Of a DNA stretch of 64,000 bases, positions 221 through 63,766 are shown piece by piece; positions within the stretch are counted from its first letter, which is position 1, and every line of letters begins with the position of its first letter. A program made the position numbers and the translations under genes. The stretch is from Euprymna scolopes (lineage: Eukaryota): the NCBI GenBank assembly GCA_053919585.1, contig CM132785.1; one strand, given 5' to 3'. The notes below the pieces were generated by a model, which was given only the letters and a program-made list of their open reading frames with translations, did not search any database and was not told the DNA's origin.

Positions 221-394
221 CTCCGGTACCACCTCCTAGGCTTTTAAGTGTTTCTCTAGCTTCCTGCAGATCGCAACTCAATTCTGGGTATCTGGCAGCT
301 TCACATTCTGTAATAGCTTCTTTTAATGCTGTCGTATCTTTGCTTCTAACAGCTTCGGCAATTTTCTCACGCAAACTCTCCGCAGATTTAATAT
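221..394 (-). CDS. Array copy 1 exon, type B, 174 nt
   Basis: ttgttag|AT ATT AAA...GGA G|gttag; DIKSAESLREKIAEAVRSKD...ECEAARYPELSCDLQEARETLKSLGGGTG. Confidence 0.88.
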
Positions 395-3300
395 CTAACA
401 AGCAGAAGCACAATCCAATTGCAAAACACTTTCGATAATTATGAATTTATTCGGTAAATAATAGAGCAAGTACTTATTTATACACACTTCAGCAAGAAAT
501 ATCTCTTATAATGAATCATTCATGAAAAATACGTGAATTAAACACAAGTTTTAAATAAAGTAAATATTGAAGAAGTTCTAACCTCCACTTCCTCCACGAA
601 GAATATCTAAAAGTTTCCGTGCTTTATCGATATCGGCGTCTAATTCTGGTATTCCAGCTGATACACTTTCAGTAATAACTTTCTCAAGCAGAGATTTGTC
701 TTGTTTTCTCATGGCTTCTGTCAGTTTCGCTCTCACACTGCCCACATTTGTCGTTCCTGTTAAGCAAACGTTTCACAAATACAAACACTGTCACAATATT
801 ACACTGAAAGCGACAACTAGTGATAAAGAAAAAGAATATAAAATGAAATTTTCCATGCAAGACAAATGAAATTTAAGTGAGAATTATTCTAACCTCCGAG
901 ACCACCTCCTAACTGTTGAAGGGCTTCTCTTGCTTTCCGTAGCACTGAACTCAGTTCTGGCAATGCGGCACGCTCGGCACCTTCGATAACTCTTTCCAGA
1001 CTAGCTTTGTCTTTGGAGTCGCTCGCTTTTTCCAGCTCATCCCGTAATTCACGCACAGACTTCTTTGGCATTTCTGACAACGGCAACAAACCATTACCAT
1101 ATATTAGTTTAATTTCTTAAAAATTGACCTAAATCATTGTTTTAAATTTACAACTGAAAGTAACCAGAATTTGAGTTCAATTAAATAAAACACCCACCTC
1201 CTATTCTGGCGTATCCAATAGGGGATAAATTGCGCCTAGCCTCTTGGATTACACTATCCAATTCTGGCATTCCAGCCGCTACACATTCACTGATCACATT
1301 CTCCAAACTGTCCTTATCTCCAACTCTCATAGTTGTCCTCAATTTCTCTCGTAAAGCGTCCGCTGTTAAAGTACCTACAATTTCAAATTCACAATTCCCT
1401 TTCTCAAACCGATTTAATCACTAATGTAATTTCATAAATTATTACATTTGAATTCTATTCTACTACAGGACACTCAGTTACTACCAGAGGTTAGATTCTA
1501 CCGCCGCTCCTCCGCCAATATTATTTCTATAAATCATATATGATTCACTAGTTAAAAAAGTGTCCTCTTCGACTTTTCAATAATTTTTCATTCAACGGGA
1601 TTTGATATCAAAGTAATAATTCCAATAGATAATCTCGTTCATAATATTATTAAATTCTACTGACGTAAACCTCTTATTATCAGCTCAATATACCAACACA
1701 GAAAAGAAGATGTATTTTTTCACTTTCCGAAATGTACAATTTGAAAATGATGCAATCTAATAAAGCAGACTTTAGAAACTGACCTCCTCGTCCTCCACCT
1801 AAACTTTCCAGTGAATCGCGGGCTTTACGTAGGTCACTGGCAATCTCTGGGTATCTGGCAACCTCAGCTTCTGCAATTGCTTTATCCAAAGCCTTGATGT
1901 CTTTTTGTCTAATAGCCATGGTCAGTTGGTCACGCAGTGTGTCGGCCGATTTCACATCTGACGAACAAATAAGTTTTACCGTCATTATACATAGCAATCC
2001 TACATATTGTATACATCTTGGGAAATTTCCAAGAAAAATGCACATTTTCAAAATCGATTACAACGTCAATAATACTATCAATCTAACCTCCAGTGCCACC
2101 ACGAAGAATGTCTGCTAAACTTCTAGCCTTCTGGATATCAGTTTCCAGCTCTGGCATTCCGACTGACACACATTCGCTGATAACCTTGTCCAAAATGATT
2201 CTGTCTTTCGCTTTCATTGCTTCCCCCAATTTACTACGTAGTCCATCAACACTCTTACTTCCTAACAAGCGAAAAATAACAACAATCATGAGCAACAATA
2301 ACCACATCGGATGTATTGAATAAAATGCATTAATTTCAAATCCATCACACTAAAGCACACAATGCATGATTAAAATTCTAACCTCCACGTCCTCCTCCCA
2401 AACTTTCCAGAGTGTCCCTGGCTTTACGTAGATCGGAGCTCACTTCGGGAAAGGCTGCTTCTTCAGCTTCTCCGATCACACTTTGAAGACTGCGTATATC
2501 TTTTGAGACGATCGCTTTCTTTATTTTATCGCGCACATTCTCAGGACTCACAGTTACGCTTTCTGTTAAGACAAGCACAATTGACGCACTCAATAACATT
2601 ACAGAAATAATGTAACGTATTCTGATTTGATTCAAATGCATCTATCAGTAAACTGCAATTCTCAAATGACCATTCAAACATCGTTTTTAAATAGAATCTC
2701 AACATAGATACGCACAAGAATCATGAAAATATCAATATATATATTTGCCCACCTCTTCTTGGCATTTCTTCCAAGTCATCCACAAGTTGTCTTGCTTGCT
2801 GTACAGCAGAATCTAGTACTGGCATACCAGCAGACACACATTCATTGATCACACCTTCCAGAGTCTCTATATCGCCATCTTGACTTGCTCTTCTTAGTTT
2901 TGCAAGCAATATTTCAGGCGATAATATTCCTATTAGATGAAACAAGCGATTTACGTTAAACAAATCTTACAACATAGCAACACTACAAATCCGCTCCTAA
3001 TCATGCAGTATATATATTAAATCTTTTATCTATTTTGATCTAAATAATTAATCGTATATCACTAGAATAATCATTTTGTTAATTATTATTTGCTAAGTAT
3101 AACCTCTCAACTAAAATTTGTTTTTCTACAAGTAACATAATTACAAACTACAGCAGGTATGCAAATATAATTATCTATACGATTCAATGAATACATGATG
3201 TTATGTGGAGCACAACGTGCGTCAATCAGGGTTTGGTAGATGAACTTATCCTTATCTATATAATCGTTAGATATATAAGCTGAAATTCAAATTTGAACAC

Positions 3301-6300
3301 TAACCTCCGGTACCACCTCCTAGGCTTTTAAGTGTTTCTCTAGCTTCCTGCAGATCGCAACTCAATTCTGGGTATCTGGCAGCTTCACATTCTGTAATAG
3401 CTTCTTTTAATGCTGTCGTATCTTTGCTTCTAACAGCTTCGGCAATTTTCTCACGCAAACTCTCCGCAGATTTAATATCTAACAAGCAGAAGCACAATCC
3501 AATTGCAAAACACTTTCGATAATTATGAATTTATTCGGTAAATAATAGAGCAAGTACTTATTTATACACACTTCAGCAAGAAATATCTCTTATAATGAAT
3601 CATTCATGAAAAATACGTGAATTAAACACAAGTTTTAAATAAAGTAAATATTGAAGAAGTTCTAACCTCCACTTCCTCCACGAAGAATATCTAAAAGTTT
3701 CCGTGCTTTATCGATATCGGCGTCTAATTCTGGTATTCCAGCTGATACACTTTCAGTAATAACTTTCTCAAGCAGAGATTTGTCTTGTTTTCTCATGGCT
3801 TCTGTCAGTTTCGCTCTCACACTGTCCACATTTGTCGTTCCTGTTAAGCAAACGTTTCACAAATACAAACACTGTCACAATATTACACTGAAAGCGACAA
3901 CTAGTGATAAAGAAAAAGAATATAAAATGAAATTTTCCATGCAAGACAAATGAAATTTAAGTGAGAATTATTCTAACCTCCGAGACCACCTCCTAACTGT
4001 TGAAGGGCTTCTCTTGCTTTCCGTAGCACTGAACTCAGTTCTGGCAATGCGGCACGCTCGGCACCTTCGATAACTCTTTCCAGACTAGCTTTGTCTTTGG
4101 AGTCGCTCGCTTTTTCCAGCTCATCCCGTAATTCACGCACAGACTTCTTTGGCATTTCTGACAACGGCAACAAACCATTACCATATATTAGTTTAATTTC
4201 TTAAAAATTGACCTAAATCATTGTTTTAAATTTACAACTGAAAGTAACCAGAATTTGAGTTCAATTAAATAAAACACCCACCTCCTATTCTGGCGTATCC
4301 AATAGGGGATAAATTGCGCCTAGCCTCTTGGATTACACTATCCAATTCTGGCATTCCAGCCGCTACACATTCACTGATCACATTCTCCAAACTGTCCTTA
4401 TCTCCAACTCTCATAGTTGTCCTCAATTTCTCTCGTAAAGCGTCCGCTGTTAAAGTACCTACAATTTCAAATTCACAATTCCCTTTCTCAAACCGATTTA
4501 ATCACTAATGTAATTTCATAAATTATTACATTTGAATTCTATTCTACTACAGGACACTCAGTTACTACCAGAGGTTAGATTCTACCGCCGCTCCTCCGCC
4601 AATATTATTTCTATAAATCATATATGATTCACTAGTTAAAAAAGTGTCCTCTTCGACTTTTCAATAATTTTTCATTCAACGGGATTTGATATCAAAGTAA
4701 TAATTCCAATAGATAATCTCGTTCATAATATTATTAAATTCTACTGACGTAAACCTCTTATTATCAGCTCAATATACCAACACAGAAAAGAAGATGTATT
4801 TTTTCACTTTCCGAAATGTACAATTTGAAAATGATGCAATCTAATAAAGCAGACTTTAGAAACTGACCTCCTCGTCCTCCACCTAAACTTTCCAGTGAAT
4901 CGCGGGCTTTACGTAGGTCACTGGCAATCTCTGGGTATCTGGCAACCTCAGCTTCTGCAATTGCTTTATCCAAAGCCTTGATGTCTTTTTGTCTAATAGC
5001 CATGGTCAGTTGGTCACGCAGTGTGTCGGCCGATTTCACATCTGACGAACAAATAAGTTTTACCGTCATTATACATAGCAATCCTACATATTGTATACAT
5101 CTTGGGAAATTTCCAAGAAAAATGCACATTTTCAAAATCGATTACAACGTCAATAATACTATCAATCTAACCTCCAGTGCCACCACGAAGAATGTCTGCT
5201 AAACTTCTAGCCTTCTGGATATCAGTTTCCAGCTCTGGCATTCCGACTGACACACATTCGCTGATAACCTTGTCCAAAATGATTCTGTCTTTCGCTTTCA
5301 TTGCTTCCTCCAATTTACTACGTAGTCCATCAACACTCTTACTTCCTAACAAGCGAAAAATAACAACAATCATGAGCAACAATAACCACATCGGATGTAT
5401 TGAATAAAATGCATTAATTTCAAATCCATCACACTAAAGCACACAATGCATGATTAAAATTCTAACCTCCACGTCCTCCTCCCAAACTTTCCAGAGTGTC
5501 CCTGGCTTTACGTAGATCGGAGCTCACTTCGGGAAAGGCTGCTTCTTCAGCTTCTCCGATCACACTTTGAAGACTGCGTATATCTTTTGAGACGATCGCT
5601 TTCTTTATTTTATCGCGCACATTCTCAGGACTCACAGTTACGCTTTCTGTTAAGACAAGCACAATTGACGCACTCAATAACATTACAGAAATAATGTAAC
5701 GTATTCTGATTTGATTCAAATGCATCTATCAGTAAACTGCAATTCTCAAATGACCATTCAAACATCGTTTTTAAATAGAATCTCAACATAGATACGCACA
5801 AGAATCATGAAAATATCAATATATATATTTGCCCACCTCTTCTTGGCATTTCTTCCAAGTCATCCACAAGTTGTCTTGCTTGCTGTACAGCAGAATCTAG
5901 TACTGGCATACCAGCAGACACACATTCATTGATCACACCTTCCAGAGTCTCTATATCGCCATCTTGACTTGCTCTTCTTAGTTTTGCAAGCAATATTTCA
6001 GGCGATAATATTCCTATTAGATGAAACAAGCGATTTACGTTAAACAAATCTTACAACATAGCAACACTACAAATCCGCTCCTAATCATGCAGTATATATA
6101 TTAAATCTTTTATCTATTTTGATCTAAATAATTAATCGTATATCACTAGAATAATCATTTTGTTAATTATTATTTGCTAAGTATAACCTCTCAACTAAAA
6201 TTTGTTTTTCTACAAGTAACATAATTACAAACTACAGCAGGTATGCAAATAAAATTATCTATACGATTCAATGAATACATGATGTTATGTGGAGCACAAC

Positions 6301-13278: not shown

Positions 13279-13361
<83 letters not shown>

Positions 13362-13451
13362 ATAATGGTGGAATGTCTTAGAGGCTAATCACGTACACCC
13401 TCTTTGGATATACATATATATGTATGCATATATATATACATATATATAATA

Positions 13452-50948: not shown

Positions 50949-51013
<65 letters not shown>

Positions 51014-56561: not shown

Positions 56562-56617
<56 letters not shown>

Positions 56618-57999
56618 GTGTGGATAGTTAGATGTAGGAAAATACATGTTTTTGGAAATACTAATTTCTATTAATCAATATTTTTTAAGTAAAAGCTCAA
56701 TGATGATAGGTAGCATGTAACATTAAAACATATATAAATAGACAATATTAGGTTACTTTGTGGTGACTAATATTGTATTCACTTTAGTGTTCATTTATTT
56801 CAAACAAAAACTTCGGTGTGTTTTTACGATAGTTTCGTCCACAGAAAACCATCCGTGAACAAAACAAACATTTCTGTCAAAATGTAGTTAAGCCTTTTTA
56901 TTGAAAAAATGAACAAAATCTGTCTCACTTAAATATAGCACCTCACATATATAAACAGGCAACAGCAGTGGGCATTCAGTATTTTCTACACTAGTTATGT
57001 GGACGATTTTTTCATCCTCACATCATCTCGCGAAAAAAACAATAAAATTCTAACTAAAACATTATCCACACTCACACATACCATAAGAAAGTATTATAAT
57101 ATAAAAGCCTGCAAATTTTCGTATTGGCCCATAGAACCAGAAATGTAAGCATTTCAATATTCAGTTTGGCGACGAGTATAGATTTATCCATATATAGATA
57201 TAACACTTTTTGGGGGCAATTTTATAAGTTCGAAATCTCGGCAACTACTGATCAGAATGTAACAAATAAAGGCTCGTTGGAAATGACCTGAATTATGTAG
57301 TGGGTTATGTGACATATGCCCTTAAGGTCAGACATTACTGTTCCAAGAAGTAGGGGATCACTTTTCTATATTAATTTAACGTAAAATGAACATCCGTTTT
57401 ATGGCCACCTTAGCTATAAAGTGGATGTTCATTTTACGTTAAATTAATATAGAAAAGTGATCCCCCACTTTATAATTTCTACATATCTTGGAAACTAATT
57501 GCTTCCTGGGATTTTACTGCTATTTTCGTTTTCAGCACCCCTCGAAAACCTATAATTAATTTTAAAGGATTTTCGTGGGTGGAAAGATACTGCACCTTTA
57601 GTTATTGATAGTGATTTTCTTTTCCTAGTTTTGCACATTTACTTAATTTACGAAATATCTGATATTTTCCCAAAACCTTTGGCCTTGGTGGGGGAGAGAC
57701 AAAAACTTACTTCTACGGTTTCAAATGATCTGAAATAACAGCAAGGGGAGACTTGATTCCAAATATTTCTCATATGTTATATCTCCCCTCTTTGATTTTT
57801 ATACATAAAGTAAATTTCACAGTGTATACGGATTATTTGATACTGGAGATATTCATAATCGTACCCTATTTCCAAAAGAGGGGAGATATAACATATGAGA
57901 AATATTTTGAATCAAGCCTCGTCTTGCTGTTATTTAAGATCATTTGAAACCATAGCAGCAAGTTTTTGTCTCCTCTCCATCAAAGCCAGAGGTTTTGGG

Positions 58000-58055
<56 letters not shown>

Positions 58056-60792
58056 TGTACAGAAAGTTGTTAGTTGAGACAGGTCATTGGTACCGTCGGT
58101 TTCAAGCCCGATAATAAGGCCCGTTTAAGGTATCCTTATCGAGCTCTCTTCAGCCAATATTCGTCTATCTTATAACCGGAAGTGTGAAGTATATATACCT
58201 CGCGAGTCCACGTTCAAANNNNNNNNNNNNNNNNNNNNNNNNNNNNNNNNNNNNNNNNNNNNNNNNNNNNNNNNNNNNNNNNNNNNNNNNNNNNNNNNNN
58301 NNNNNNNNNNNNNNNNNNNNNNNNNNNNNNNNNNNNNNNNNNNNNNNNNNNNNNNNNNNNNNNNNNNNNNNAATTTTCAACTTTTAATTATTTAAATTTA
58401 AGATCTAATTTCGAAAAAATGTTTTTTTTAATATATGAATCGATTTTAATTTGAACCCCATTTAATTTTAAAATCTCTTTCCTTATGTATAAAAACTTTA
58501 AAATCTGTATTGGTATCGGTTAAAAACTTAAAAATTCGTTTAATTATATCGAACATTTAAAAATTTCCAAAAATACGTTTAAAGTTTTAAAAAATATATT
58601 TTTAATTATATCGAATCACGTTTTTATGTGTTTATAACTTTAAAAGACCACAAGGAAAATTTTAATAATAGGCCAACCTGCAGGTTAATAAACCCGGCTA
58701 AAAGCGAAATCGGTCTAGCTAGCAAGTCTATACTTAGAGAAATAGTAAAAGAGATAAAAAGAAAATCAAATCTTAATTTGTGGGCAGACACTAGCGCGGT
58801 ACTGGACTGGTTTAAAAACATAACTGAACCACACAAATGTAAGTTTACACAACTGGATATCGTCGATTTTTACCCTTCAATCACTAAGGAAATCCTAGAA
58901 AAATCGTTGATCTTCGCATCAAAATATAGAAAGATAAGTGAGCTCGATAAGGAAACAATCATGCAAGCTCGACAGACCCTTTTATTTTTTGACGATAAAA
59001 CGTGGGTCAAAAAATCAAACCCCGAAGACCCCTTTGACGTCGCGATGGGGGCGTATGACAGTGCTGATATCTGCGATCTGGTTGGACTTTTTCTACTGGA
59101 GACCATGAAATATAAATTCCCAGATCACTTTTTTGGATTATATAGAGATGATGGACTTTGCCTATCGCGTGACTACAATGGATGTGCACTAGACAGGCTT
59201 AGAAAAGACCTAACTGAATTTTTTAAGGAACTAGGCTTTAAAATAATAATACATACAAATTTAGATAGAGTAGATTTTTTAGATGCCACTCTAGATCTCG
59301 AGAAGAAAATACACAAACCCTTTCACAAACTAAATGAAAAACTCATGTATATAAATAAGGGTTCATGCCACCCACCCACAGTGTTTAAAAATATGGTAGC
59401 GAACATTAGCCAAAGGATTTCACGGCTTTCTTCGAACGCTGAAGTGTTCGAGAAAGCAGCACCATATTATAATGACGCACTGCATCAAAGTGGGTTCAAT
59501 GAAAACATAAAATTTCAACAAACCCAGAATAAAGAAAATATAAAACGAAAGAGGAAACGGAAAATAATCTGGTTCTTACCTCCGTTTTCATTGAACACTA
59601 AAACTAGAGTAGGGCATTGTTTTCTTAGCCTTCTAGACAAACATTTTCCAAGAACACATAGACTACATAAACTTTTTAATAGAAACACGGTGAAAGTTAG
59701 TTACTCGACAGCTCCATCAATTAAGTCGATAATATCCAAAGAACCAAAAAAGATAGATAACGCAGGCTGCTCTTGCAGGACCAAAAATAGCTGTCCATTG
59801 GAGGGTAATTGTAAAGCTGAATCCCTTGTCTATGAGGCCACAGTAACGGAACAATCCACAAATATACCGGAAATATATATAGGTATGACAAAAGGCCAAT
59901 TTAAACAAAGGTATTATGCACATATGAGCTCCTTTAGAGCTAAAACAAGGATGAATACAGCATTAGCTACCCGCGTGTGGGAGCTTAAAGAAAAAAATAC
60001 ACCCTTTTCCATAAAATGGAGAAAAATAGAGCATAGACCAGCCTACGTCCCGGAATTAAGTCAATGCTCACTCTGTAACGCAGAGAAGTACTACATCCTC
60101 CGGTCCATTCATGACCCAAAAATAAAATGTTTAAATGTGAGGAGTGAAGCTTTGAAAAGTTGCATACATAGAAGGAAGGGTCTCCTAATAAATTGGATCA
60201 ATGAAAAGAACAACACTTAGATGTTGTTTTTATATATATATATATAAGGAAAAAAAAAATTGTAAATACATAAATAATTAGTCGGTAAACTTGGATTTTA
60301 ATCGCAATTATATTATAGATTTTTAATTAATGTCATATATATATATATATAATATTTTATAAATGTAATTTATAATCTATTTCGAATTTAAAACTATAGA
60401 AAAATATAATAATGTTAATAAACTAGGGAAATCACTTAGGATAGATAAATACTCACTTCCCCAAACCTTGAAAGATTTGGGTTTTTAAAAAATAATTTTT
60501 AAACGTATTTCGAAATTTTTAAACGTGATTCGATATAATTAAAAATATATTTTTTAAAACTTTAAACGTATTTTTGGAAATTTTTAAATGTTCGATATAA
60601 TTAAACGAATTTTTAAGTTTTTAACCGATACCAATACAGATTTTAAAGTTTTTATACATAAGGAAAGAGATTTTAAAATTAAATGGGGTTCAAATTAAAA
60701 TCGATTCATATATTAAAAAAAACATTTTTTCGAAATTAGATCTTAAATTTAAATAATTAAAAGTTGAAAATTAGGTATTACATTACCCGATA

Positions 60793-60834
<42 letters not shown>

Positions 60835-63065
60835 GATATAGATAGATATAGATAGATAAAAAAAAAAAGGGGGGGGGGATTAAACAAAACGAGATTTGAA
60901 CGTGGACTCGCGAGGTATATATACTTCACACTTCCGGTTATAAGATAGACGAATATTGGCTGAAGAGAGCTCGATAAGGATACCTTAAACGGGCCTTATT
61001 ATCGGGCTTGAAACCGACGGTACCAATGACCTGTCTCAACTAACAACTTTCTGTACACAAAATATAAGTACGCTCTTAAAATTTGGATTTTCCTTTTAAT
61101 TGAGCACTCTGCTGGAATTCTTTTTCCAAAAAAACTAATCATATATATATATATATATATATATAATGATATTTAGCATTTTTCCATGAAATTCAAACTG
61201 ATAATTGTAAATTAAATTTTATTAAAGTAAAATGATATATTGCAATATATAATAATGATAACACCTATTATAACTATTGTGTTTTACACAGTTTTGTTAA
61301 TCATGTCATTCATTGATATGTCACATAATATTTACCTGCTCAATTTCCTATGTAGTATTATAAATTTAACTAACAAAGTTGACATAAAATTAAGCAGCTT
61401 TCTTCTTTCTCACATGTTCTCGCTATTTAACCACCCAAAATTAAAAGTATTGGCAAATTTCAATATTCTAACCTCCACGTCCGCCTCCAAGATGTTGCAA
61501 AACCTCTCTGGCTTCGCGCAAATCGCTACCAAGTTCAGGAAAGGCAGCCGCTTCACATTGTAAAATTATCTTTTCGAGAACAAAACGATCTTTTTCTTTC
61601 ATAGCGGTTTTCAATTGCTCACGTAGGGTATCAGGAATTTTCGGCGCTAGTAAACAAGAGAGATAGTTATTCGTAAATATTACAAAATAATTAATTATAG
61701 TAAACTTATACCTGGAAAAGCAAACTAAGTAATAACTATACAAATGTGAGGTACTATATAAAACAATACATCACAAACCTGATTTTTATCACGTGTATAA
61801 GTTTCCTTTTAGAAAAGAAATATGACATTTAAAACATTTACTTATCTAGAGAGTTTCTGCATCTTCATAATATGGCTAAAAGGGACACTTATTTATAATG
61901 TATAGTAATTACTATCATATTTATAAATTCCTTCATGCATTGACCATATTGACAGGTTAAATACACTTAAATATTAGGTACTGTACACATATTTTAAACA
62001 TTAAACAGTAATCCACCTAGTATAATTCCTTTAAAGAAACGGTTAATTATTTGGGAAATGATTTTACCAAGTCTATCTGTTAATTTGGTCATAACATCTC
62101 TGGCCTTTGTCACATCTGTTTCGAGCTCCAGAAATCCGGACGCTACACATTCAGTTATAGCACTACTAATTGCTTCTTTGTCTTTACGATTTACGGTAGC
62201 AGTCAGCGTCTTCCGCAGACTTTCTGCCGTTTTCTGACCTGATATTAAACAAAAGAAAAATAAAATAAATTCAATTGATTAAACAAGCTACGAATGAAGA
62301 AAATTCACGAATTTTAATAATCTTTCCAAATGGAAAATTTTACTATAGTGTAACGAGTCTTTCTTATCTAATGTTGAATATTGAAATACTACAGTGCTAT
62401 CTAGTTTATAATCCTTACATTTTCCTTAATAAAATCAAAGATTTTTTATATTCCCCATAAATCAGAGAAATCTCCGACGACACTGACCTCCTCTACTACC
62501 ACTCAATCTTTTCAAGGTTTCTCTGGCCCTCGTCATTTCAGAGCCCAGCTCTGGATACCCCGCCACTTCACATTCTTCAATAGCTTTTTGCAAACTTGGG
62601 ATCGATTTCCGTCTAACTGAAACTCGGAGTTGGTCTCGAAGATTTTCCGGAGAGTCAACAACTGAAGGCAAAACGGACAACAAAAAATAAATTTAATTAA
62701 GTTTGGGTATTTTAATAAGAAATAGAATCTAATTAATTCATAAAAAAAATAGGATATTCATTTTATTAATTTTTTAACCAAGAAAATGTATAAGTTTTAA
62801 ATAATCTGTGCAATTTTTTAGGTAGATATAACACAAAATGAGCATCTTTAAAGTAAATTAACTCGAAAGGAGCATTAAAGATGTAGTTTATTTAAAATGG
62901 TTCTGGTTAACGTTTGTTTACACTTTTTGGAAATGTAAGTTATAATATATCAGGTACTTTAATTTAACCATAATAAAACATATTTTAGTAACACATTGTT
63001 AAAATTCATTTATTACGCAAATATCTTGTATTGATTAATTTAACAGACTGAATTACAAAATAATA

Positions 63066-63131
<66 letters not shown>

Positions 63132-63766
63132 AAACTTTTAAAATAGGATATATATATATAGTCAAACTTTTTCAAAAGTATATATAATATAGTCAAACTT
63201 TTTTTTCTATCTTATTACTATTACAAAATATTTTTTTAAGAATCTTAGTTTATAGTTGATTTTTAACTTTAAATATAAGTTTTTTTACGGATTTAAAAGC
63301 GTTTATGTTATATTCTAACTTGTATATTTGAAGTTTTACTTACTGATTATAATTTTTTGTCAATCTCCTAATTCTTATTTAAAGTATCGGTAAACACTTC
63401 GAAACATTGCTCGTCTATCACAATTCTAACTTCTATCTGGTGCTTTTATTATAATAAAATGTTTAAGGACACAGATTCTTCTAATTAAATTGCATAAACA
63501 TACAAATATTCTGAACCTATTTTTACAGTAAAACTATTATCAACTACGGCTTATTAAAACAAATATACATAATACAACATGCAGAAGCTGACCTCCTGTT
63601 CCTCCTTTCCAAACATCTAATGTGCATCGGGCCTGTTGAATATCATCGTCAAGTTCTGACATACCGGCAGCAACACATTCGTTTATGATTTCCGCCAATT
63701 CTGTTTTACTTCTCTGCGTCAACGCTAGATTCAAACGTCCTCGAAGATTATCAGGCGATTTTTTCC
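221..63766 (-). CDS. Giant multi-exon gene (partial, both ends outside window) encoding a tandem ~58-aa helical-repeat protein; 76 exons, about 4,420 codons in window
   Basis: 76 segments bounded by AG acceptor and GT donor, all phase 1-1, lengths 123-186 nt and all divisible by 3, stop-free when spliced. 75 encode the same repeat (LR..L..A...kD...Le..I.EC..ag.PEL..d...AR..L..L.GG.G). The short ORFs in the track are these exons extended into introns. Confidence 0.9.
583..756 (-). CDS. Array copy 1 exon, type A, 174 nt (not in ORF track)
   Basis: aacag|GA ACG...GGA G|gttag; GTTNVGSVRAKLTEAMRKQDKSLLEKVITESVSAGIPELDADIDKARKLLDILRGGSG. Confidence 0.88.
894..1073 (-). CDS. Array copy 1 exon, type B, 180 nt
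   Basis: gtcag|AA ATG...G|gttag; EMPKKSVRELRDELEKASDSKD...EGAERAALPELSSVLRKAREALQQLGGGLG. Confidence 0.88.
1198..1374 (-). CDS. Array copy 1 exon, type A, 177 nt (not in ORF track on this strand)
   Basis: ttgtag|GT ACT...ATA GGA G|gtggg; GTLTADALREKLRTTMRVGDKDSLENVISECVAAGMPELDSVIQEARRNLSPIGYARIG. Confidence 0.85.
1784..1957 (-). CDS. Array copy 1 exon, type B, 174 nt
   Basis: gtcag|AT GTG...G|gtcag; DVKSADTLRDQLTMAIRQKDIKALDKAIAEAEVARYPEIASDLRKARDSLESLGGGRG. Confidence 0.88.
2088..2261 (-). CDS. Array copy 1 exon, type A, 174 nt
   Basis: gttag|GA AGT...G|gttag; GSKSVDGLRSKLGEAMKAKDRIILDKVISECVSVGMPELETDIQKARSLADILRGGTG. Confidence 0.88.
2383..2562 (-). CDS. Array copy 1 exon, type B, 180 nt
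   Basis: aacag|AA AGC...G|gttag; ESVTVSPENVRDKIKKAIVSKD...EAEEAAFPEVSSDLRKARDTLESLGGGRG. Confidence 0.88.
2753..2929 (-). CDS. Array copy 1 exon, type A, 177 nt
   Basis: aatag|GA ATA...AGA G|gtggg; GILSPEILLAKLRRASQDGD...ECVSAGMPVLDSAVQQARQLVDDLEEMPRR. Confidence 0.85.
3305..6013 (-). CDS. Array copy 2: 8 exons (3305-3478, 3667-3840, 3978-4157, 4282-4458, 4868-5041, 5172-5345, 5467-5646, 5837-6013)
   Basis: Copy 1 exons shifted by +3084 with identical splice sites. Confidence 0.87.
6389..9097 (-). CDS. Array copy 3: 8 exons (6389-6562, 6751-6924, 7062-7241, 7366-7542, 7952-8125, 8256-8429, 8551-8730, 8921-9097)
   Basis: Copy 1 exons shifted by +6168 with identical splice sites. Confidence 0.87.
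9473..11814 (-). CDS. Array copy 4 (partial): 7 exons (9473-9646, 9835-10008, 10146-10325, 10450-10626, 11036-11209, 11340-11513, 11635-11814)
   Basis: Copy 1 exons shifted by +9252. The boundary exon 11635-11814 has extra substitutions (KLKKAIAS versus KIKKAIVS). Confidence 0.87.
12301..12474 (-). CDS. Repeat exon, type B with A-like end, 174 nt
   Basis: cccag|AA CTC...GAA G|gtgag; ELKSAETLREELMKAMRLND...ECDAVCYPELSSDIHEAKMNILFLDGQDE. Confidence 0.85.
13187..13292. repeat. Inverted repeat, about 39-bp arms, next to (TA)n(TG)n
   Basis: tagttagttagttataaaatatatatgacgattaagcta versus tagcttaatcgccatatatatttcataactaactaacta. Confidence 0.75.
13762..13935 (-). CDS. Repeat exon, type A, 174 nt (not in ORF track on this strand)
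   Basis: aatag|GG ACC...G|gttag; GTKTPEELRTKLRNAMEKRDKKLLIKVISECVAAGIPELEPDIAEARRLVNILRGGTG. Confidence 0.88.
15074..15253 (-). CDS. Repeat exon, type B, 180 nt
   Basis: gtcag|AA TCT...G|gttag; ESSTITLGMLEDALERAISERD...EGAERAAFPELNWRLQNARDALYSLGGGRG. Confidence 0.87.
16080..16256 (-). CDS. Repeat exon, type A, 177 nt
   Basis: tccag|GT ACA...GGA G|gtgcg; GTLVPDTLSAKLKDAMTKGDKDNLQSVLYECVAAGMPELDTDIKKARGALIGMEYSTAG. Confidence 0.85.
16823..16996 (-). CDS. Repeat exon, type B, 174 nt
   Basis: attag|AT CTA...G|gtttg; DLKPPDILRDQLTMAIRQKDIKVLDKAITEAESSRYPELAADLRKARDTLEKLGGGRG. Confidence 0.87.
17655..17828 (-). CDS. Repeat exon, type A, 174 nt
   Basis: atcag|GT TCA...G|gttag; GSKTSESLRENLKEAIKTKDRIVLDKAISECVSAGMPELDADIQKARSVADILRGGTG. 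Confidence 0.88.
18350..18529 (-). CDS. Repeat exon, type B, 180 nt
   Basis: gttag|AA ACT...G|gttag; ETIHLDPECLRDKLKKAMKSRD...EAEKSALPELGSDLRKARDTLEKLGGGRG. Confidence 0.88.
18588..18670. repeat. (CA)n then (TA)n microsatellite (one of many intronic microsatellites)
   Basis: Seen directly. Other long (TA)n runs occur near 12188, 13291, 20126, 21234, 25121, 29875, 34196, 35379, 38881, 41595, 58003 and 63069. Confidence 0.95.
19386..19508 (-). CDS. Unique acidic linker exon, 123 nt (not in ORF track)
   Basis: tttttgttag|GG ATA...TAT G|gttag, phase 1-1, stop-free; GISSPFDDILGEPDFQLIDDEELTEDDRQIDREVEERDLKY (16 of 41 residues are D/E). Confidence 0.8.
19630..20126 (+). mobile_element. Degenerate 3' fragment of an RTE-like LINE
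   Basis: Translates to ...QLC*TCHILRMQEEIIPKILMYSQLDSDHRAVGRP (post-RT WxGHxxRM...PK...GRP motif), then a C2H2-like CTICGLLCRSFSGLKCHLRLTH at about 20000-20065, ending in (TA)n. Confidence 0.7.
20560..20733 (-). CDS. Repeat exon, type A, 174 nt
   Basis: gatag|GA ACC...GAA G|gtgag; GTKTPEYLRDRLTDALMHRD...ECVALGFPELEPLIEMARKVLESMEYDDE. Confidence 0.87.
21615..21788 (-). CDS. Repeat exon, type B, 174 nt
   Basis: tttag|AT ATA...G|gtcag; DIRSPEFLREQLKLAMKQKN...ECEAAGYLELSSRLQKARETLEGLVGSYG. Confidence 0.87.
21963..22136 (-). CDS. Repeat exon, type A, 174 nt
   Basis: gatag|GA TTT...G|gttag; GFKTSIILQDKLKKAMRRKD...ECVAAGMPELDDDIQEAREILDILKGGTG. Confidence 0.88.
22933..24226 (+). mobile_element. 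Defective Tc1-family DNA transposon with long TIRs
   Basis: Left end gtctgcacttgtaatttt...cctcatttgattcgcctttt is the reverse complement of about 24090-24211. HTH-like remnant near 23270-23375. Right flank is (TA)n. Left end is in an N gap. Confidence 0.88.
23682..24080 (+). pseudogene. Tc1 DD34E transposase catalytic fragment
   Basis: FSDE, GGGVLVWG, MQDNAPIH, WPAQSPDLNPIENVW; 34 residues between the second D and E. Upstream is frameshifted and the C-terminus is cut directly into the TIR. Confidence 0.88.
24258..25121. mobile_element. Second, non-coding relative of the same Tc1 family, in tandem with the first
   Basis: Begins aggcggcaaaacgtgcggac after (TA)n. About 24888-25121 is a diverged reverse complement of 22933-23161 and ends ...ggtgccac(TA)n. 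Confidence 0.72.
25640..25813 (-). CDS. Repeat exon, type B, 174 nt (not in ORF track)
   Basis: tgtag|GA CCG...G|gttag; GPRTTSTLRDKLKAAMKQKDISSLRMVIEECEISAYPELGKDLRKARDALENLGGGRG. Confidence 0.88.
26411..26584 (-). CDS. Repeat exon, type A, 174 nt
   Basis: attag|GA GTA...GAA G|gtttg; GVKTPEKLLAKLKRAIKREE...ECVASGFPELNSEIEKAREILKEMEDNPE. Confidence 0.86.
26707..27855 (+). mobile_element. Degenerate Tc1/mariner-superfamily element
   Basis: TA-flanked imperfect TIRs CAGAGTAATCCAAAACTAGGTGGACAGTA and (reverse complement) CAGGGTGGTCCAAAAATAAGTGAACAGTA. Internal remnant DLNRFFFLWGY resembles the SPDLxPxDFFLWGY transposase motif. Confidence 0.7.
28282..28455 (-). CDS. Repeat exon, type B, 174 nt
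   Basis: atcag|AC CTG...G|gttag; DLKCPEDLRSQLQTAIKERD...ECEVANYPELGDHLGQARDVLEEMGEGRG. Confidence 0.88.
28939..29112 (-). CDS. Repeat exon, type A, 174 nt (not in ORF track)
   Basis: cccag|GG AAA...G|gttaa; GKKDVNSLLNKLIKAMERKDKSVLESTINECIAAGLPELDFEIQQSRNILHKLNGGIG. Confidence 0.87.
29461..29833. repeat. 107-bp inverted repeat (29461-29567 and 29727-29833), 2 mismatches
   Basis: Direct reverse-complement comparison. Confidence 0.9.
30498..30671 (-). CDS. Repeat exon, type B, 174 nt (not in ORF track)
   Basis: accag|GA CCG...G|gttag; GPSHLDLLQEKLSTAVKLKDKSELKKAILECEEAELPELCEQLGLARDTLESLGGGRG. Confidence 0.88.
31316..31489 (-). CDS. Repeat exon, type A, 174 nt
   Basis: gtcag|GG TCA...AAA G|gtgcg; GSKTPDSLLGQLMKASRQKD...ESAASGFPELDNQIQKARDLLKTLPETDK. 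Confidence 0.86.
31846..32019 (-). CDS. Repeat exon, type B, 174 nt
   Basis: attag|AT ATC...G|gtcag; DIKPPDVLRNQLKEAIDKKE...ECETVNYPELSTELRKARDVLLALGGGRG. Confidence 0.88.
32243..32316. repeat. (TAC)n/(AAT)n trinucleotide microsatellite
   Basis: Seen directly. Confidence 0.9.
32913..33086 (-). CDS. Repeat exon, type A, 174 nt (not in ORF track)
   Basis: attag|GT ACG...G|gttag; GTKKAEDLLTKLQKAVDSQNKISLERVINECVAAGMPELDFEIQKAREVLNVLNGGTG. Confidence 0.88.
33591..33776 (-). CDS. Repeat exon, type B, 186 nt
   Basis: gtcag|AC TCT...G|gttag; DSNAASQSTISLRDKINAAIRHKD...ECEAAEYPELSPNLRKARDTLDELGGGRG. Confidence 0.85.
34266..34870 (+). mobile_element. Non-autonomous Helitron/Helentron-like (HINE/DINE-type) element
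   Basis: 5' CTAG followed by a short hairpin (acccgtcgttgactgggt), an internal ~135-bp tandem duplication (ccccataattttattataccata...ccattctatggagg), and a 3' end cagacacacaca...ctttatatata, all within TA repeats. Confidence 0.5.
35438..36100 (+). mobile_element. Dispersed MITE-like repeat with internal inverted repeat; second copy in opposite orientation at about 57100-57999
   Basis: 35440-35570 matches 57669-57795. 35910-36075 is the reverse complement of 57105-57270. Confidence 0.7.
36398..36571 (-). CDS. Repeat exon, type A (divergent), 174 nt (not in ORF track)
   Basis: cttag|AA ACT...CCA G|gttgg; ETKKPDPLIEELRRAIAQRQKPKLEKVLDRCVATGLPQLDQYIKAARKSLTSLPDERP. Confidence 0.85.
36725..37201. 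repeat. About 84-bp inverted repeat (36725-36808 and 37117-37201)
   Basis: atattgatattcctac...ctcatgtccatagta versus tactatggacatgag...taggaatatcaatat. Confidence 0.88.
37401..37574 (-). CDS. Repeat exon, type B, 174 nt (not in ORF track)
   Basis: cgcag|AA ATA...G|gtcag; EIIPAKLLSEQLKRSIQDNNIDHLKKAIEECETASYPELAAQLRVAREKLSSLTGIQG. Confidence 0.87.
38326..38499 (-). CDS. Repeat exon, type A, 174 nt
   Basis: actag|GC ACA...G|gtcag; GTKSVTSLGKNLKKAVDKKD...EAVSAGLPELADDIHEARKTLNLLQGGTG. Confidence 0.87.
39216..39389 (-). CDS. Repeat exon, type B, 174 nt
   Basis: gttag|GT GCC...G|gtcag; GAKDPMHLRYKIKRAIGLKS...ECEEAGYPELVDDLQRARDTLEHLSGVRG. Confidence 0.87.
40087..40804. repeat. 54-bp direct repeat (40087-40140 and 40751-40804), 1 mismatch
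   Basis: agaacgatact[t/a]gtctttttacgctttcattttaacacacaggaggttaaacat occurs twice. Confidence 0.88.
40834..41007 (-). CDS. Repeat exon, type A, 174 nt (not in ORF track)
   Basis: gttag|GA TCG...CAA G|gttgg; GSKTPSTLLGKLNRSIRRKDKDAIERVISECVAAGFSELDSDVQRARDALKQLERESQ. Confidence 0.86.
42203..42376 (-). CDS. Repeat exon, type B, 174 nt (not in ORF track)
   Basis: ctcag|AA TAT...G|gttag; EYKSPEELRIKLKSARKEGDLAVLQKAVKECEEAAYPELSYDLVKARDTIETLNGERG. Confidence 0.87.
43168..43341 (-). CDS. Repeat exon, type A, 174 nt (not in ORF track)
   Basis: tttag|GA TTT...AAA G|gttag; GFRSASSYVDSLNRHINEKDKSSLQKAINECIAAGMPELDSEIKKARAALRSLTGDTK. Confidence 0.87.
43807..43980 (-). CDS. Repeat exon, type B, 174 nt (tandem CAGCAG acceptor)
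   Basis: cagcag|AA GAG...G|gttag; EEKTPAKLREELKKCTRDADKDGLERVIAECEAAACPELAFDLRKARHALNSLGGGQG. Confidence 0.86.
44136..44309 (-). CDS. Repeat exon, type A, 174 nt (not in ORF track)
   Basis: attag|GA TCA...GAA G|gttcg; GSISPDLLRMKLTQAIRRKNPKYLERMINECVASGFPELQDNIQEARDALQSFQEGEE. Confidence 0.83.
44698..44871 (-). CDS. Repeat exon, type B, 174 nt
   Basis: ggcag|AG CTG...G|gttag; ELTSAVALRERLQSAIDKGD...ECETFAYPELSEDLCKARETLEVLGGGRG. Confidence 0.88.
45658..45831 (-). CDS. Repeat exon, type A, 174 nt (not in ORF track)
   Basis: atcag|GA ACT...G|gttag; GTKTEDSLKEKLAQAMKKRDKRNLEQVINECVSAGLGELDSDIDQARNILDQVKGGKG. Confidence 0.88.
46662..46835 (-). CDS. Repeat exon, type B, 174 nt (not in ORF track on this strand)
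   Basis: tctag|AT TTG...G|gttag; DLITPESLRARLRKSVKKQDKSDLEKAIRECEAASLPELSYALREARAALKHLGGGNG. Confidence 0.88.
47717..47899 (-). CDS. Repeat exon, type A, 183 nt
   Basis: cctag|GA TCA...GAA G|gttgg; GSLSADTLLGKLKRAIRRKN...ECVASGFPELSPEIQEARHILKELEVLEDEKE. Confidence 0.85.
48273..48446 (-). CDS. Repeat exon, type B, 174 nt (not in ORF track)
   Basis: cttag|AA GCA...CAA G|gttag; EAKSPEELRKQLQEATQSKDRAALEKAIRECETAKFPELGSDLAKARDSLEILGGDRQ. Confidence 0.87.
49885..50058 (-). CDS. Repeat exon, type A, 174 nt (not in ORF track on this strand)
   Basis: gtcag|GA TCA...AAA G|gttag; GSEFIEPLREKLQSASETKDKSALQEAINKSLALGLPELDADILQAKELLKELGDLPK. Confidence 0.86.
50187..50351 (-). CDS. Repeat exon, type B, 165 nt (shifted acceptor; not in ORF track in this frame)
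   Basis: tttttttctgtatctaaag|GA CTC...G|gttag; GLDQLRDQLRKATRSKDISLLKKAIEDAEKICIPELGSDVRKAREALEKLGGDRG. Confidence 0.78.
50949..51022. repeat. (ATT)n microsatellite
   Basis: Seen directly. Confidence 0.93.
51513..51686 (-). CDS. Repeat exon, type A, 174 nt (not in ORF track on this strand)
   Basis: ctcag|GA ATA...GAA G|gttgg; GIKTPGALIEKLKRAMRRKDMRNLEKVINECVSAGMPELDEEISRARELLEELGKTPE. Confidence 0.86.
52237..52410 (-). CDS. Repeat exon, type B, 174 nt
   Basis: cttag|GC TCT...G|gttag; GSKTPDVIRARLNTAIALKD...DCEEAAYPELGTDLRKARDILEALGGGRG. Confidence 0.88.
53638..53811 (-). CDS. Repeat exon, type A, 174 nt
   Basis: attag|GA CAT...G|gttag; GHKSAEELRGKLQVAITQRN...ECVAAGFPELDSDINHARDVLFMLGGGRG. 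Confidence 0.88.
54876..55049 (-). CDS. Repeat exon, type B, 174 nt
   Basis: tttag|AA ACA...G|gttag; ETQSPDSLRKKLKLAVTGQD...ECEVAGYPELGSELRRARSILEHLGGGVG. Confidence 0.88.
56037..56210 (-). CDS. Repeat exon, type A, 174 nt
   Basis: gacag|GA TTT...G|gttag; GFKNPDSLRGKLKLAVRWKD...ECVASGFPELDTEVHKARDVLDILGGGQG. Confidence 0.88.
57100..57999 (-). mobile_element. Second copy of the MITE-like repeat, with a ~125-bp inverted repeat (57669-57795 and 57870-57999) and an inserted perfect 43-bp-arm hairpin (57353-57465)
   Basis: Reverse-complement comparison within the element and with 35438-36100. Confidence 0.7.
58085..58159 (-). ncRNA. Type I hammerhead ribozyme (inverted pLTR copy, sense to host gene)
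   Basis: Exact reverse complement of the motif at 60954-61028. Confidence 0.8.
58628..60220 (+). CDS. Penelope-like RT plus GIY-YIG endonuclease, N-terminally truncated, 530 aa open frame
   Basis: RT motifs QLDIVDFYPSI, AMGAYDSADICDLVG, LYRDDGL, VDFLD; RKRKIIWFLPPFS; CSCRTKNSCPLEGNC linker; LVYEATV...IYIGMTKGQFKQRYYAH endonuclease; C-terminal CSLCNAEK...LNVRSE...CIH. Confidence 0.92.
   Translation: MFITLKDHKENFNNRPTCRLINPAKSEIGLASKSILREIVKEIKRKSNLNLWADTSAVLDWFKNITEPHKCKFTQLDIVDFYPSITKEILEKSLIFASKYRKISELDKETIMQARQTLLFFDDKTWVKKSNPEDPFDVAMGAYDSADICDLVGLFLLETMKYKFPDHFFGLYRDDGLCLSRDYNGCALDRLRKDLTEFFKELGFKIIIHTNLDRVDFLDATLDLEKKIHKPFHKLNEKLMYINKGSCHPPTVFKNMVANISQRISRLSSNAEVFEKAAPYYNDALHQSGFNENIKFQQTQNKENIKRKRKRKIIWFLPPFSLNTKTRVGHCFLSLLDKHFPRTHRLHKLFNRNTVKVSYSTAPSIKSIISKEPKKIDNAGCSCRTKNSCPLEGNCKAESLVYEATVTEQSTNIPEIYIGMTKGQFKQRYYAHMSSFRAKTRMNTALATRVWELKEKNTPFSIKWRKIEHRPAYVPELSQCSLCNAEKYYILRSIHDPKIKCLNVRSEALKSCIHRRKGLLINWINEKNNT
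60954..61028 (+). ncRNA. Type I hammerhead ribozyme in the Penelope pLTR
   Basis: Stem I attgg/ccaat; CTGAAGA at 60960-60966; stem II gagctcgataa/ttatcgggctt; GAAA at 61010-61013; short stem III ccgacgg; GTA cleavage triplet ending at 61022. Confidence 0.82.
61473..61646 (-). CDS. Repeat exon, type B, 174 nt
   Basis: actag|CG CCG...G|gttag; APKIPDTLREQLKTAMKEKD...QCEAAAFPELGSDLREAREVLQHLGGGRG. Confidence 0.88.
62068..62238 (-). CDS. Repeat exon, type A, 171 nt (not in ORF track)
   Basis: atcag|GT CAG...CTT G|gtaaa; GQKTAESLRKTLTATVNRKDKEAISSAITECVASGFLELETDVTKARDVMTKLTDRL. Confidence 0.83.
62488..62661 (-). CDS. Repeat exon, type B, 174 nt
   Basis: ttcag|TT GTT...G|gtcag; VVDSPENLRDQLRVSVRRKS...ECEVAGYPELGSEMTRARETLKRLSGSRG. 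Confidence 0.87.
63593..63766 (-). CDS. Repeat exon, type A, 174 nt (most 5' exon in window)
   Basis: attag|GG AAA...G|gtcag; GKKSPDNLRGRLNLALTQRS...ECVAAGMSELDDDIQQARCTLDVWKGGTG. Confidence 0.87.

What the first reader, a model, noticed from the sequence alone, without database searches (positions are those of the whole stretch)
221..63766. Unrecognised giant one-exon-one-domain repeat gene: at least 75 symmetric exons, each a ~58-aa helical module
Seen: 76 phase 1-1 exons, all in frame with each other, totalling about 4,420 codons with no stop, start or terminal exon. Many are invisible in the ORF track. Every mapped exon is intact despite TE-riddled, unalignable introns, which implies purifying selection. 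Inference: each module looks like three amphipathic helices (LR..L..A / kD..Le..I.EC / PEL..d...AR..L..L) joined by a GGG.G hinge. This would give a beads-on-a-string protein of more than 480 kDa if all exons are used, possibly an elastic or scaffold filament. I do not recognise it as a named family. I have a weak, unverified recollection that invertebrate hillarin/KY-like proteins carry similar helical repeats.
Basis: partly seen in the sequence, partly recalled or inferred. Interest (0 to 1): 0.9.

Follow-up and report, generated by a model that had tools for sequence, protein, structure and literature searches.

The report
Middle of a giant KY-like gene
The window is an internal stretch of one ~640-kb cephalopod gene of the KY/hillarin family whose tail is built from hundreds of one-exon, three-helix modules, so it could encode a titin-sized protein that no paper we could find describes.

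Summary
The window carries 75 (not 76) minus-strand exons. All have lengths divisible by 3 (53 are 174 nt), AG/GT at a fixed phase-1 position and no stop; they total 4,381 codons (~479 kDa). Types A and B alternate without exception, including across all seven N gaps, which all lie in introns.

It is not an orphan. Upstream on the same strand lie a transglutaminase-like exon and three Ig-like_KY domains (E 1e-58). Two C-terminal tail exons lie downstream. The order matches Octopus sinensis XP_036360723.1 (6,596 aa, 94 modules, "uncharacterized protein"). Here the array is about six times larger: 630 first-look candidates, 322 confirmed in the 232 kb I could read.

Old exons (window 12-64 kb) are under purifying selection: dN/dS is about 0.1-0.3, while synonymous sites and introns are randomised. 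The first 11.8 kb is different. It is 3.8 copies of a 3,084-bp, 8-exon unit, 99.8-99.9% identical including introns, so those 31 exons are not independent evidence.

One public assembled contig joins exons 24 and 25 exactly at the predicted GT..AG. AlphaFold gives three helices per module and low-confidence glycine linkers.

Earlier follow-ups of this scan reached the same reading on other windows of this gene.

The parts
221..63766 (-). Array of 75 module exons, numbered 1-75 in transcription order (descending coordinates). It is an internal part of the giant KY-like gene.
   Evidence: All exons are on the minus strand, phase 1-1, with no stops. A (odd-numbered) and B (even-numbered) types alternate perfectly. 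A looser 4-exon super-repeat runs A1 (GG.G tail)-B-A2 (acidic tail)-B.
12301..63766 (-). Exons 1-44, the old, diverged part. Coordinates: 63593-63766, 62488-62661, 62068-62238, 61473-61646, 56037-56210, 54876-55049, 53638-53811, 52237-52410, 51513-51686, 50187-50351, 49885-50058, 48273-48446, 47717-47899, 46662-46835, 45658-45831, 44698-44871, 44136-44309, 43807-43980, 43168-43341, 42203-42376, 40834-41007, 39216-39389, 38326-38499, 37401-37574, 36398-36571, 33591-33776, 32913-33086, 31846-32019, 31316-31489, 30498-30671, 28939-29112, 28282-28455, 26411-26584, 25640-25813, 21963-22136, 21615-21788, 20560-20733, 18350-18529, 17655-17828, 16823-16996, 16080-16256, 15074-15253, 13762-13935, 12301-12474.
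   Evidence: One search gives the coordinates; median pS 0.75-0.77 (saturated), pN 0.37-0.38, dN/dS about 0.25-0.28. Median intron length is 826 nt.
1..11842 (-). Higher-order repeat: 3.8 copies here of a 3,084-bp unit with 8 exons. The whole block is G000:C3:154868606-154887842, 6.2 copies. It holds exons 45-75. The reference copy has exons at 11635-11814, 11340-11513, 11036-11209, 10450-10626, 10146-10325, 9835-10008, 9473-9646 and 8921-9097. The further copies lie at -3084, -6168 and -9252.
   Evidence: 99.7-99.9% identity, introns included; independent public contigs L056 and L057 reproduce the unit at 99.7-99.97%.
36398..37574 (-). Exon 24 (37401-37574), an 829-nt intron (36572-37400) and exon 25 (36398-36571). 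This is the one splice junction seen in public data.
   Evidence: Logan contig SRR24189497_25331 (L051) runs from window 38629 down to 37401, then jumps exactly to 36571 and continues to 36335. The sequence reads ...CAAGGAG|AAACTAAA..., so a GT..AG intron was removed. The two neighbouring introns are retained.
52237..56210 (-). Exons 5-8, positional orthologues of modules 24-27 of Octopus sinensis XP_036360723.1.
   Evidence: Identities are 84-86%, 63%, 72-74% and 67%, in the same order, against a background of 45-60%.
22137..25639 (-). Intron between exons 34 and 35. It holds three N gaps (22625-22932, 24278-24418, 25387-25543) and a DDE_3 transposase fragment (23682-24080, + strand).
   Evidence: gaps; DDE_3, E 6.6e-12.
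56211..61472 (-). 5,262-nt intron between exons 4 and 5. It holds N gap 58219-58371 and a young inserted element. The element has perfect inverted arms, 58047-58623 (interrupted by the gap) against 60521-61066, and a 530-aa ORF at 58628-60220 (+ strand).
   Evidence: arms 100% complementary. (no Pfam hit). (language-model neighbours at 0.96-0.97 are HTH_animal / RVT_1 / GIY-YIG clusters, i.e. Penelope-like retroelements; this is a lead only).
33777..36397 (-). Intron between exons 25 and 26, with N gap 35007-35235.
   Evidence: The flanking exons are intact and the A/B order is kept.
44872..45657 (-). Intron between exons 15 and 16, with N gap 45097-45303.
55050..56036 (-). Intron between exons 5 and 6, with N gap 55530-55670.

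Best explanation
The window is an internal coding stretch of one very large gene on the minus strand of G000:C3, spanning about 155,035,338 to 154,398,026 (~637 kb). The gene is the orthologue of octopus LOC115214248 and belongs to the KY (kyphoscoliosis peptidase)/hillarin family.

Shown:
- The N-terminal part has a transglutaminase-like core and three Ig-like_KY domains, followed by a charged coiled-coil exon.
- A tail array follows, of about 600 exons, each encoding one ~58-aa three-helix module.
- Two conserved C-terminal tail exons end the gene.
- The modules are old paralogues kept under purifying selection.
- On top of them, two blocks have recently been amplified and homogenised as higher-order tandem repeats: a 3,084-bp unit x6.2 and a ~1,286-bp unit x32.

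Inferred mechanism:
- The KY-like head anchors the protein to a cytoskeletal partner. Vertebrate KY is a Z-disc/filamin-C-associated protein.
- The tail forms a micrometre-scale chain of small helical bundles joined by flexible Gly-rich hinges, acting as an elastic tether, ruler or scaffold.
- Because every exon is symmetric (phase 1-1), exon skipping or copy-number change alters length without breaking the frame.
For: Exon anatomy: 75 of 75 modules are on one strand, with AG/GT in fixed phase and no stops.

Gene context:
- Ig-like_KY x3 at E 1.1e-58, upstream on the same strand.
- Exon-by-exon collinearity of the head with the Octopus vulgaris model, at 79-86% identity.
- First exon and tail exons located at C3:155035096-338, 154401344-643 and 154398026-220.
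- All 322 modules in the 264 kb I read, and all 150 scored genome-wide hits, are on the minus strand in this locus. There are 630 first-look candidates.
- Octopus sinensis XP_036360723.1 (6,596 aa) has the same architecture: head, 94 modules, tail.
- Octopus bimaculoides shows the same 174-nt phase-1 exons.

Selection: pN 0.26-0.38 against pS 0.73-0.77, with introns at background identity.

Splicing: one exact GT..AG junction in a public contig.

Expression: the 1.44-kb KY exon is held at 0.96-0.97 by 18 small (transcriptome-sized) run assemblies from 6 studies.

Fold: AF2 gives 3 helices per module with pLDDT 81-87. For four modules, the linkers fall below pLDDT 50 and pTM drops to 0.41.
Against: - Only one splice junction was seen. 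Most public contigs over the array are unspliced.
- I could read only 264 kb of the ~637 kb. The total of ~600 modules rests on an unscored first-look count.
- Copy numbers in the near-identical repeat blocks depend on the assembly.
- Donor sites are atypical: GTTAG or GTCAG in most exons.
- The mechanical/scaffold function is inference only. The catalytic His of the transglutaminase core appears to be replaced by Thr, so no enzymatic role is implied.
Confidence: 0.85

Rival explanations
1. The gene is real, but only a minority of the exons is used in any one mRNA. Symmetric exons and weak donors allow massive exon skipping, so the proteins are far smaller (octopus-like, a few thousand aa). 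The homogenised repeat blocks are then largely neutral 'coding macrosatellites' that vary in copy number.
For: All exons are phase 1-1. Most donors have a pyrimidine at +3, and 28 of 52 give an in-frame TAG right after the exon. Introns are widely retained in public contigs. The repeat blocks are 98.6-99.9% identical, introns included. Octopus models have 94 modules or fewer.
Against: The 44 old exons in this window are each kept intact under purifying selection, which requires that each is translated at least sometimes. No skipping event has been observed.
Confidence: 0.35
2. The exon count is inflated by assembly error in the near-identical tandem blocks. The true gene has fewer, or a different number of, repeat units.
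For: The 3,084-bp and ~1,286-bp units are 98.6-99.9% identical over 19 kb and 42 kb. The scaffold has seven N gaps in this window alone.
Against: The unit sequence itself is reproduced in independent public contigs. Copies differ by scattered substitutions that grade with distance, as expected of a real array. The 44 diverged exons are unaffected.
Confidence: 0.15
3. The modules are several independent small genes, or a decaying pseudo-exon array, rather than parts of one transcript.
For: Many modules appear as stand-alone ORFs in a bacterial-style ORF list. Most contigs are unspliced.
Against: No module begins with a start codon in context. Every module is flanked by AG and GT in the same phase. 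One junction is spliced exactly as predicted. The head and tail exons bracket the array collinearly with octopus full-length models. There are no stops or frameshifts in 4,381 codons, although synonymous sites are saturated.
Confidence: 0.03

Closest known systems
Octopus LOC115214248 (O. sinensis XP_036360723.1, 6,596 aa, 'uncharacterized protein'). Related models: O. vulgaris CAI9725887.1 and O. bimaculoides XP_052825369.1 ('kyphoscoliosis peptidase-like, partial').
   Same: Same architecture and order: KY-like head, coiled coil, module array, conserved tail. Same 174-nt phase-1 exons. Window exons 5-8 are positional orthologues of its modules 24-27.
   Different: The octopus model has 94 modules. 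This genome has about 600 candidates over ~565 kb, including two large homogenised higher-order repeat blocks. None of these proteins has been studied.
KY (kyphoscoliosis peptidase) of vertebrates and hillarin / HIL-like proteins of invertebrates
   Same: The head shares the transglutaminase-like core and Ig-like_KY domains. Fish KY matches at E 1e-50 to 1e-59, 24-26% identity. Chiton, bivalve, bryozoan and annelid KY/hillarin-like proteins carry 1-2 weak copies of the same helical module after the Ig-like domains (fold-level leads).
   Different: Vertebrate KY has no such module. No other family member found here has more than two copies. The catalytic His seems to be replaced by Thr here (weak alignment).
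Nebulin and titin (from general knowledge): giant muscle proteins built from one-module exons. Nebulin has super-repeats and a near-identical 8-exon triplicated (TRI) region.
   Same: One exon per module, symmetric phases, super-repeat order, and a recently duplicated multi-exon block more than 99% identical. Potentially a similar size class.
   Different: No sequence or fold relationship. The modules here are 58-aa three-helix bundles with Gly hinges, not 35-aa actin-binding repeats or Ig/Fn3 domains. A muscle role is not shown.
Spectrin-type three-helix repeats; TPR-like helical repeats
   Same: Tandem three-helix units.
   Different: Half the length of a spectrin repeat, and joined by Gly-rich loops rather than a continuous helix. 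No significant sequence or structure match: Foldseek PDB finds nothing at E<=0.001, and the best VIA Z is 7.6, below the noise level for helical proteins.

Membership tests
KY / hillarin family (whole gene) | Ig-like_KY domains (Pfam PF23265) | tested here: met
   The exon at G000:C3:154975832-154977271 (L034:5832-7271:-) has three stretches, E 1.1e-58, 197 bits against a cut-off of 27.
KY / hillarin family (whole gene) | Transglutaminase-like core (Pfam PF01841) | tested here: inconclusive
   This genome's exon alone gives no Pfam hit at E 0.01. It is 85-86% identical to residues 156-292 of the octopus orthologue, and that orthologue passes PF01841 (25.8 bits against a cut-off of 23).
KY / hillarin family (whole gene) | Sequence homology to named KY / hillarin-like proteins | tested here: met
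   The octopus orthologue head finds 118 proteins at E<=1e-10. They include fish 'kyphoscoliosis peptidase', oyster 'Hillarin-like' and Mya 'HIL-like protein'.
KY / hillarin family (whole gene) | Cys-His-Asp catalytic triad of transglutaminase-like enzymes | tested here: inconclusive
   In the only PDB alignment (FAP246, 7n6g; the weak, non-significant domain of that hit) the His position reads Thr (..ARNTWNAV..). The Cys position could not be aligned with these tools.
KY / hillarin family (this window) | The window's modules are physically part of the same transcript as the KY head | tested here: inconclusive
   Same strand, collinear with octopus full-length models, and one internal junction is spliced.
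Spectrin repeat | ~106-aa three-helix repeat with a continuous inter-repeat helix; match to the family profile | tested here: not met
   No Pfam hit. The module is 58 aa with a Gly-rich loop between units. No spectrin among the structure matches.
TPR / designed helical repeats | Significant profile or fold match | tested here: not met
   Only de novo designed helical proteins match, at E 8e-5 or weaker by sequence. VIA Z <= 7.6 with about 60 residues aligned, within the stated noise for helical folds.

The most novel reading that the evidence does not exclude
Most of the ~600 module exons are joined into one mRNA. That would give a single polypeptide of about 36,000 aa (~3.9 MDa), as large as or larger than titin. 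It would be a previously undescribed class of giant animal cytoskeletal protein: a KY-like anchoring head with a micrometre-long chain of three-helix beads on glycine hinges, whose length evolves quickly through homogenised multi-exon repeat blocks.
Probability: 0.25. Interest if true: 0.85.

Novelty: new variant of a known kind. Interest (0 to 1): 0.6.

Why it matters
If the array is translated largely in full, this would be among the largest animal proteins. It would also be a new solution to building a micrometre-scale elastic or ruler molecule, attached to a head domain whose vertebrate relative (KY) is needed for muscle maintenance.

Even if only subsets of exons are used, the locus is a clean natural example of two things. 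One is domain amplification from 1-2 copies (other lophotrochozoans) to ~94 (octopus) to ~600 (this genome). The other is multi-exon coding repeats kept more than 99% identical, as in the nebulin TRI region.

The 58-aa module is not in Pfam and has no solved relative, so it deserves a family definition. It also shows how gene annotation fragments or truncates such genes.

Tried and rejected
So there is no read-level view of splicing, strand or depth.
The 3' 330 kb of the gene was not read.
- Tandem Repeats Finder found nothing because the periods exceed 500.
- Pfam on single modules, on four modules and on whole octopus arrays gave only sub-threshold or summed spurious hits.
- PDB by sequence gave only designed helical proteins.
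- Structure searches: Foldseek PDB and AFDB Swiss-Prot gave nothing significant, and the VIA wide search gave generic helical matches at Z <= 7.6.
- The ESM Atlas search on one module scored 0.88 against unnamed clusters, which is uninformative.
- Literature searches for kyphoscoliosis peptidase + cephalopod, hillarin, and giant gene/squid found no paper on this gene.
- Two-module proteins P0002-P0006 were considered as splice evidence and rejected. They are genomic double-module exons (intron loss), not spliced transcripts.
- Other public contigs over the array are unspliced.
- Dinoflagellate, Rhodelphis and Polykrikos proteins match about 40 residues of the module. I did not establish whether this is homology or convergence of an idealised helical repeat.

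Full report
OBSERVATION

The window is AT-rich (67%) and has seven N runs. I built a profile from seven seed modules and searched the six-frame translation. It finds 75 significant matches, every one on the minus strand, from 221 to 63766. The single extra row is a spurious overlapping hit with E 9.

For each match, an AG lies immediately upstream and a GT immediately downstream, at the same codon phase. That gives 75 exons of 165-186 nt, of which 53 are exactly 174 nt. All lengths are divisible by three, all exons are phase 1-1, and none has a stop. Together they make 13,143 nt = 4,381 codons, about 479 kDa and pI 5.5.

Aligned to the profile, odd-numbered exons are type A (G.K... ECVAAG[MF]PELD...). 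Even-numbered exons are type B (...ECE.A.YPEL..DLRKARD.LE.LGGGRG). The alternation has no exception. Type A further alternates between a GG.G tail and an acidic tail, which gives a 4-exon super-repeat.

ASSEMBLY GAPS

All seven N runs fall inside introns:
- three between exons 34 and 35;
- one each between exons 25/26, 15/16, 5/6 and 4/5.

No exon is cut, the flanking splice sites are intact, and the A/B order is preserved across each gap. At most an even number of exons could be hidden in a gap. I did not try to fill any gap.

TWO AGE CLASSES OF EXON

Window 1-11,842 is 3.8 copies of a 3,084-bp unit holding eight exons. The copies are 99.8-99.9% identical, introns included. The whole block has 6.2 copies at C3:154868606-154887842. 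A second block of about 32 copies of a ~1,286-bp unit, at 98.6-99.3% identity, lies at 154816958-154858586. So 31 of the 75 exons are very recent copies and carry no independent information about selection.

The other 44 exons are old:
- Among same-type pairs, synonymous differences are saturated (median pS 0.75-0.77) while pN is 0.37-0.38. Where dN/dS can be computed it is about 0.25-0.28.
- For the collinear paralogous blocks, exons 38-44 against 45-51, pooled pS is 0.73, pN is 0.26 and dN/dS is about 0.12.
- Flanking introns are 50-59% identical, no better than unrelated introns (54 +/- 3%).

Forty-four intact 58-codon frames with randomised silent sites and introns mean long-term purifying selection on the peptide.

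WHAT GENE IT IS

Searching the whole genome with the module profile gave 630 first-look candidates. All 150 that were scored lie on contig C3 between 154.40 and 154.96 Mb, on the minus strand. I fetched 200 kb of flanks and combined them with the window to make 264 kb. In that stretch there are 322 modules, all on the minus strand, and the array's 5' edge is at 154,968,558.

Upstream on the same strand lie four further features:
- a charged coiled-coil exon;
- a 480-codon exon with three Ig-like_KY domains (PF23265, E 1.1e-58);
- a transglutaminase-like core exon;
- an exon encoding the region just before the core.

The last three exons match residues 80-743 of Octopus vulgaris CAI9725887.1 in order, at 79-86% identity. 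The first coding exon maps to C3:155035096-155035338. The octopus C-terminal tail maps to 154401344-643 and 154398026-220, just beyond the last module hits.

The locus therefore has the order head - array - tail over about 637 kb. Octopus sinensis XP_036360723.1 (LOC115214248, 6,596 aa) has exactly this architecture, with 94 modules. An Octopus bimaculoides locus shows the same 174-nt phase-1 exons inside a 5,242-aa gene model. Window exons 5-8 are positional orthologues of octopus modules 24-27 (84-86, 63, 72-74 and 67% identity, same order).

The head is a bona fide KY/hillarin family member. It retrieves fish KY, oyster 'Hillarin-like' and Mya 'HIL-like protein'.

THE MODULE ELSEWHERE

Long arrays of the module were found only in octopod proteins. 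Scanning 117 KY-like proteins with the module profile finds one or two weaker copies after the Ig-like domains in a chiton, several bivalves, a bryozoan, a leech and a polychaete. It finds none in vertebrate KY. Structure-level leads point the same way: oyster K1R7C8, a slug protein and leech T1F739.

It also suggests stepwise amplification: 1-2 copies ancestrally, about 94 in octopus, and about 600 here.

The module is not in Pfam and has no solved relative. Protist proteins (Symbiodiniaceae, Rhodelphis, Polykrikos) match about 40 residues of it. I could not tell homology from convergence.

EXPRESSION AND SPLICING

- A public assembled contig (Logan SRR24189497_25331, L051) is collinear with window 38629-37401. 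It then continues exactly at 36571, so the 829-nt GT..AG intron between exons 24 and 25 has been removed at the predicted bases. The two neighbouring introns are retained. This fixes the transcribed strand and shows that the predicted sites are used.
- Other contigs from the same study are unspliced. That fits nascent RNA of a very long gene, but it is also what DNA carry-over would give.
- The 1.44-kb KY exon is held almost completely (0.96-0.97 of sampled words) by 18 small, transcriptome-sized run assemblies from six studies of the same organism.
- Several such runs hold about 0.23-0.27 of a 6-kb window stretch whose exons make up 20% of it. This is suggestive only.
- Donor sites are unusual: GTTAG or GTCAG in most exons. 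In 28 of 52 unique exons, read-through meets an in-frame TAG at once.

STRUCTURE AND LIKELY MECHANISM

AlphaFold2 was run on a natural two-module exon of this gene with 28 aligned pairs. It gives pLDDT 87 and pTM 0.67, with three helices (14, 14 and 17 residues) per module. Four modules give pLDDT 81 but pTM 0.41, and the Gly-rich linkers at 114-118 and 171-175 fall below pLDDT 50. So the beads are confident and their mutual arrangement is undefined.

The conserved positions (L8, L12, L24, I28, P37-E38-L39, A46-R47) are mostly core or helix-cap positions. That is expected of a structural repeat rather than of diverse binding sites. The octopus N-terminus has no obvious signal peptide (read directly from the sequence; this is inference).

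I therefore propose the following, as inference. The protein is cytoplasmic. The KY-like head docks it to a cytoskeletal partner, and the tail is a long, flexible chain of small bundles that serves as an elastic tether, ruler or scaffold. Its length can be tuned by exon skipping or by unit copy number, because every exon is symmetric. At about 110 Da per residue, 600 modules plus head and tail would be about 36,000 aa, roughly 3.9 MDa.

WHAT REMAINS OPEN
- How many exons are used together.
- In which tissue the gene is expressed.
- The true copy numbers of the homogenised blocks.
- Whether the head retains any catalytic residue. The His position reads Thr in the only, weak, structural-sequence alignment available.

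EARLIER NOTES OF THIS SCAN

After I had reached this reading, the scan's index showed that follow-ups on four other windows of the same gene had come to the same conclusion: a giant KY-like gene of about 600 modules and ~640 kb. It also showed a first-reader note on the 3,084-bp block of this window. These notes are not independent evidence. I re-derived the gene limits, the module count in 264 kb, the repeat blocks and the KY link myself.

VERDICT

The gene has annotated but uncharacterised octopus orthologues, so it is a new and much larger variant of a known but unstudied kind, not a categorically new entity.

Noticed in passing
window 58047-61066 (arms 58047-58623 and 60521-61066; ORF 58628-60220, + strand): A young insertion in the intron between exons 4 and 5. 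It has perfectly complementary inverted arms of at least 252 + 172 nt, one arm interrupted by N gap 58219-58371, around a 530-aa ORF with no Pfam hit. Language-model neighbours (0.96-0.97) are HTH_animal / RVT_1 / GIY-YIG clusters, which points to a Penelope-like retroelement.
   Followed up: partly
window 23682-24080 (+): A DDE_3 (Tc1/mariner-type) transposase fragment, E 6.6e-12, in the gap-rich intron between exons 34 and 35.
   Followed up: partly
window, donor sites of exons 1-52: Most donors are GTTAG or GTCAG, with a pyrimidine at +3, instead of the usual GTRAG. In 28 of 52 the retained intron gives an in-frame TAG immediately after the exon. The one verified junction uses GTCAGA. This may bear on slow or regulated splicing.
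   Followed up: partly
G000:C3:154942049-154942453, 154943981-154944418, 154801586-154802077 (minus strand): Three exons each encode an A+B module pair with the intervening intron lost. Near-identical double-module ORFs exist in other assemblies (P0004, P0003, P0005), so these intron losses seem to be shared with related species.
   Followed up: partly
G000:C3:154816958-154858586: A second, larger homogenised block in the same gene: about 32 copies of a ~1,286-bp unit at 98.6-99.3% identity, with identity falling gradually with distance between copies.
   Followed up: partly
proteins P0023, P0032, P0100, P0116, P0130, P0138 (Rhodelphis, Symbiodinium, Polykrikos and others): Protist proteins made of a ~40-aa repeat with the same pattern (D...L..AI.EC...GLP....L..A) match the module profile at E 1e-11 to 1e-19. 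They also appear in the AlphaFold cluster search. Homology versus convergence is unresolved.
   Followed up: no
L035 (G000:C3:154980001-154990000): 5018-6685 (+) and 7917-8468 (+): A reverse-transcriptase ORF pair (RVT_1) and a DDE_3 transposase ORF lie in the 12-kb intron between the second and third head exons.
   Followed up: no
window 35389-35649 and 57791-58051: A 261-nt inverted pair at 87% identity, 22 kb apart, in two different introns. Probably two copies of a dispersed repeat.
   Followed up: no
G000:C27:96026528-96126111 and C75:9535-16129: Paralogous KY-like head exons (44-49% identity to the octopus head) occur in two near-identical copies on C27 and again on the small contig C75. 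Each contains one TAA inside the match. This may be a duplicated or unplaced paralogue.
   Followed up: no
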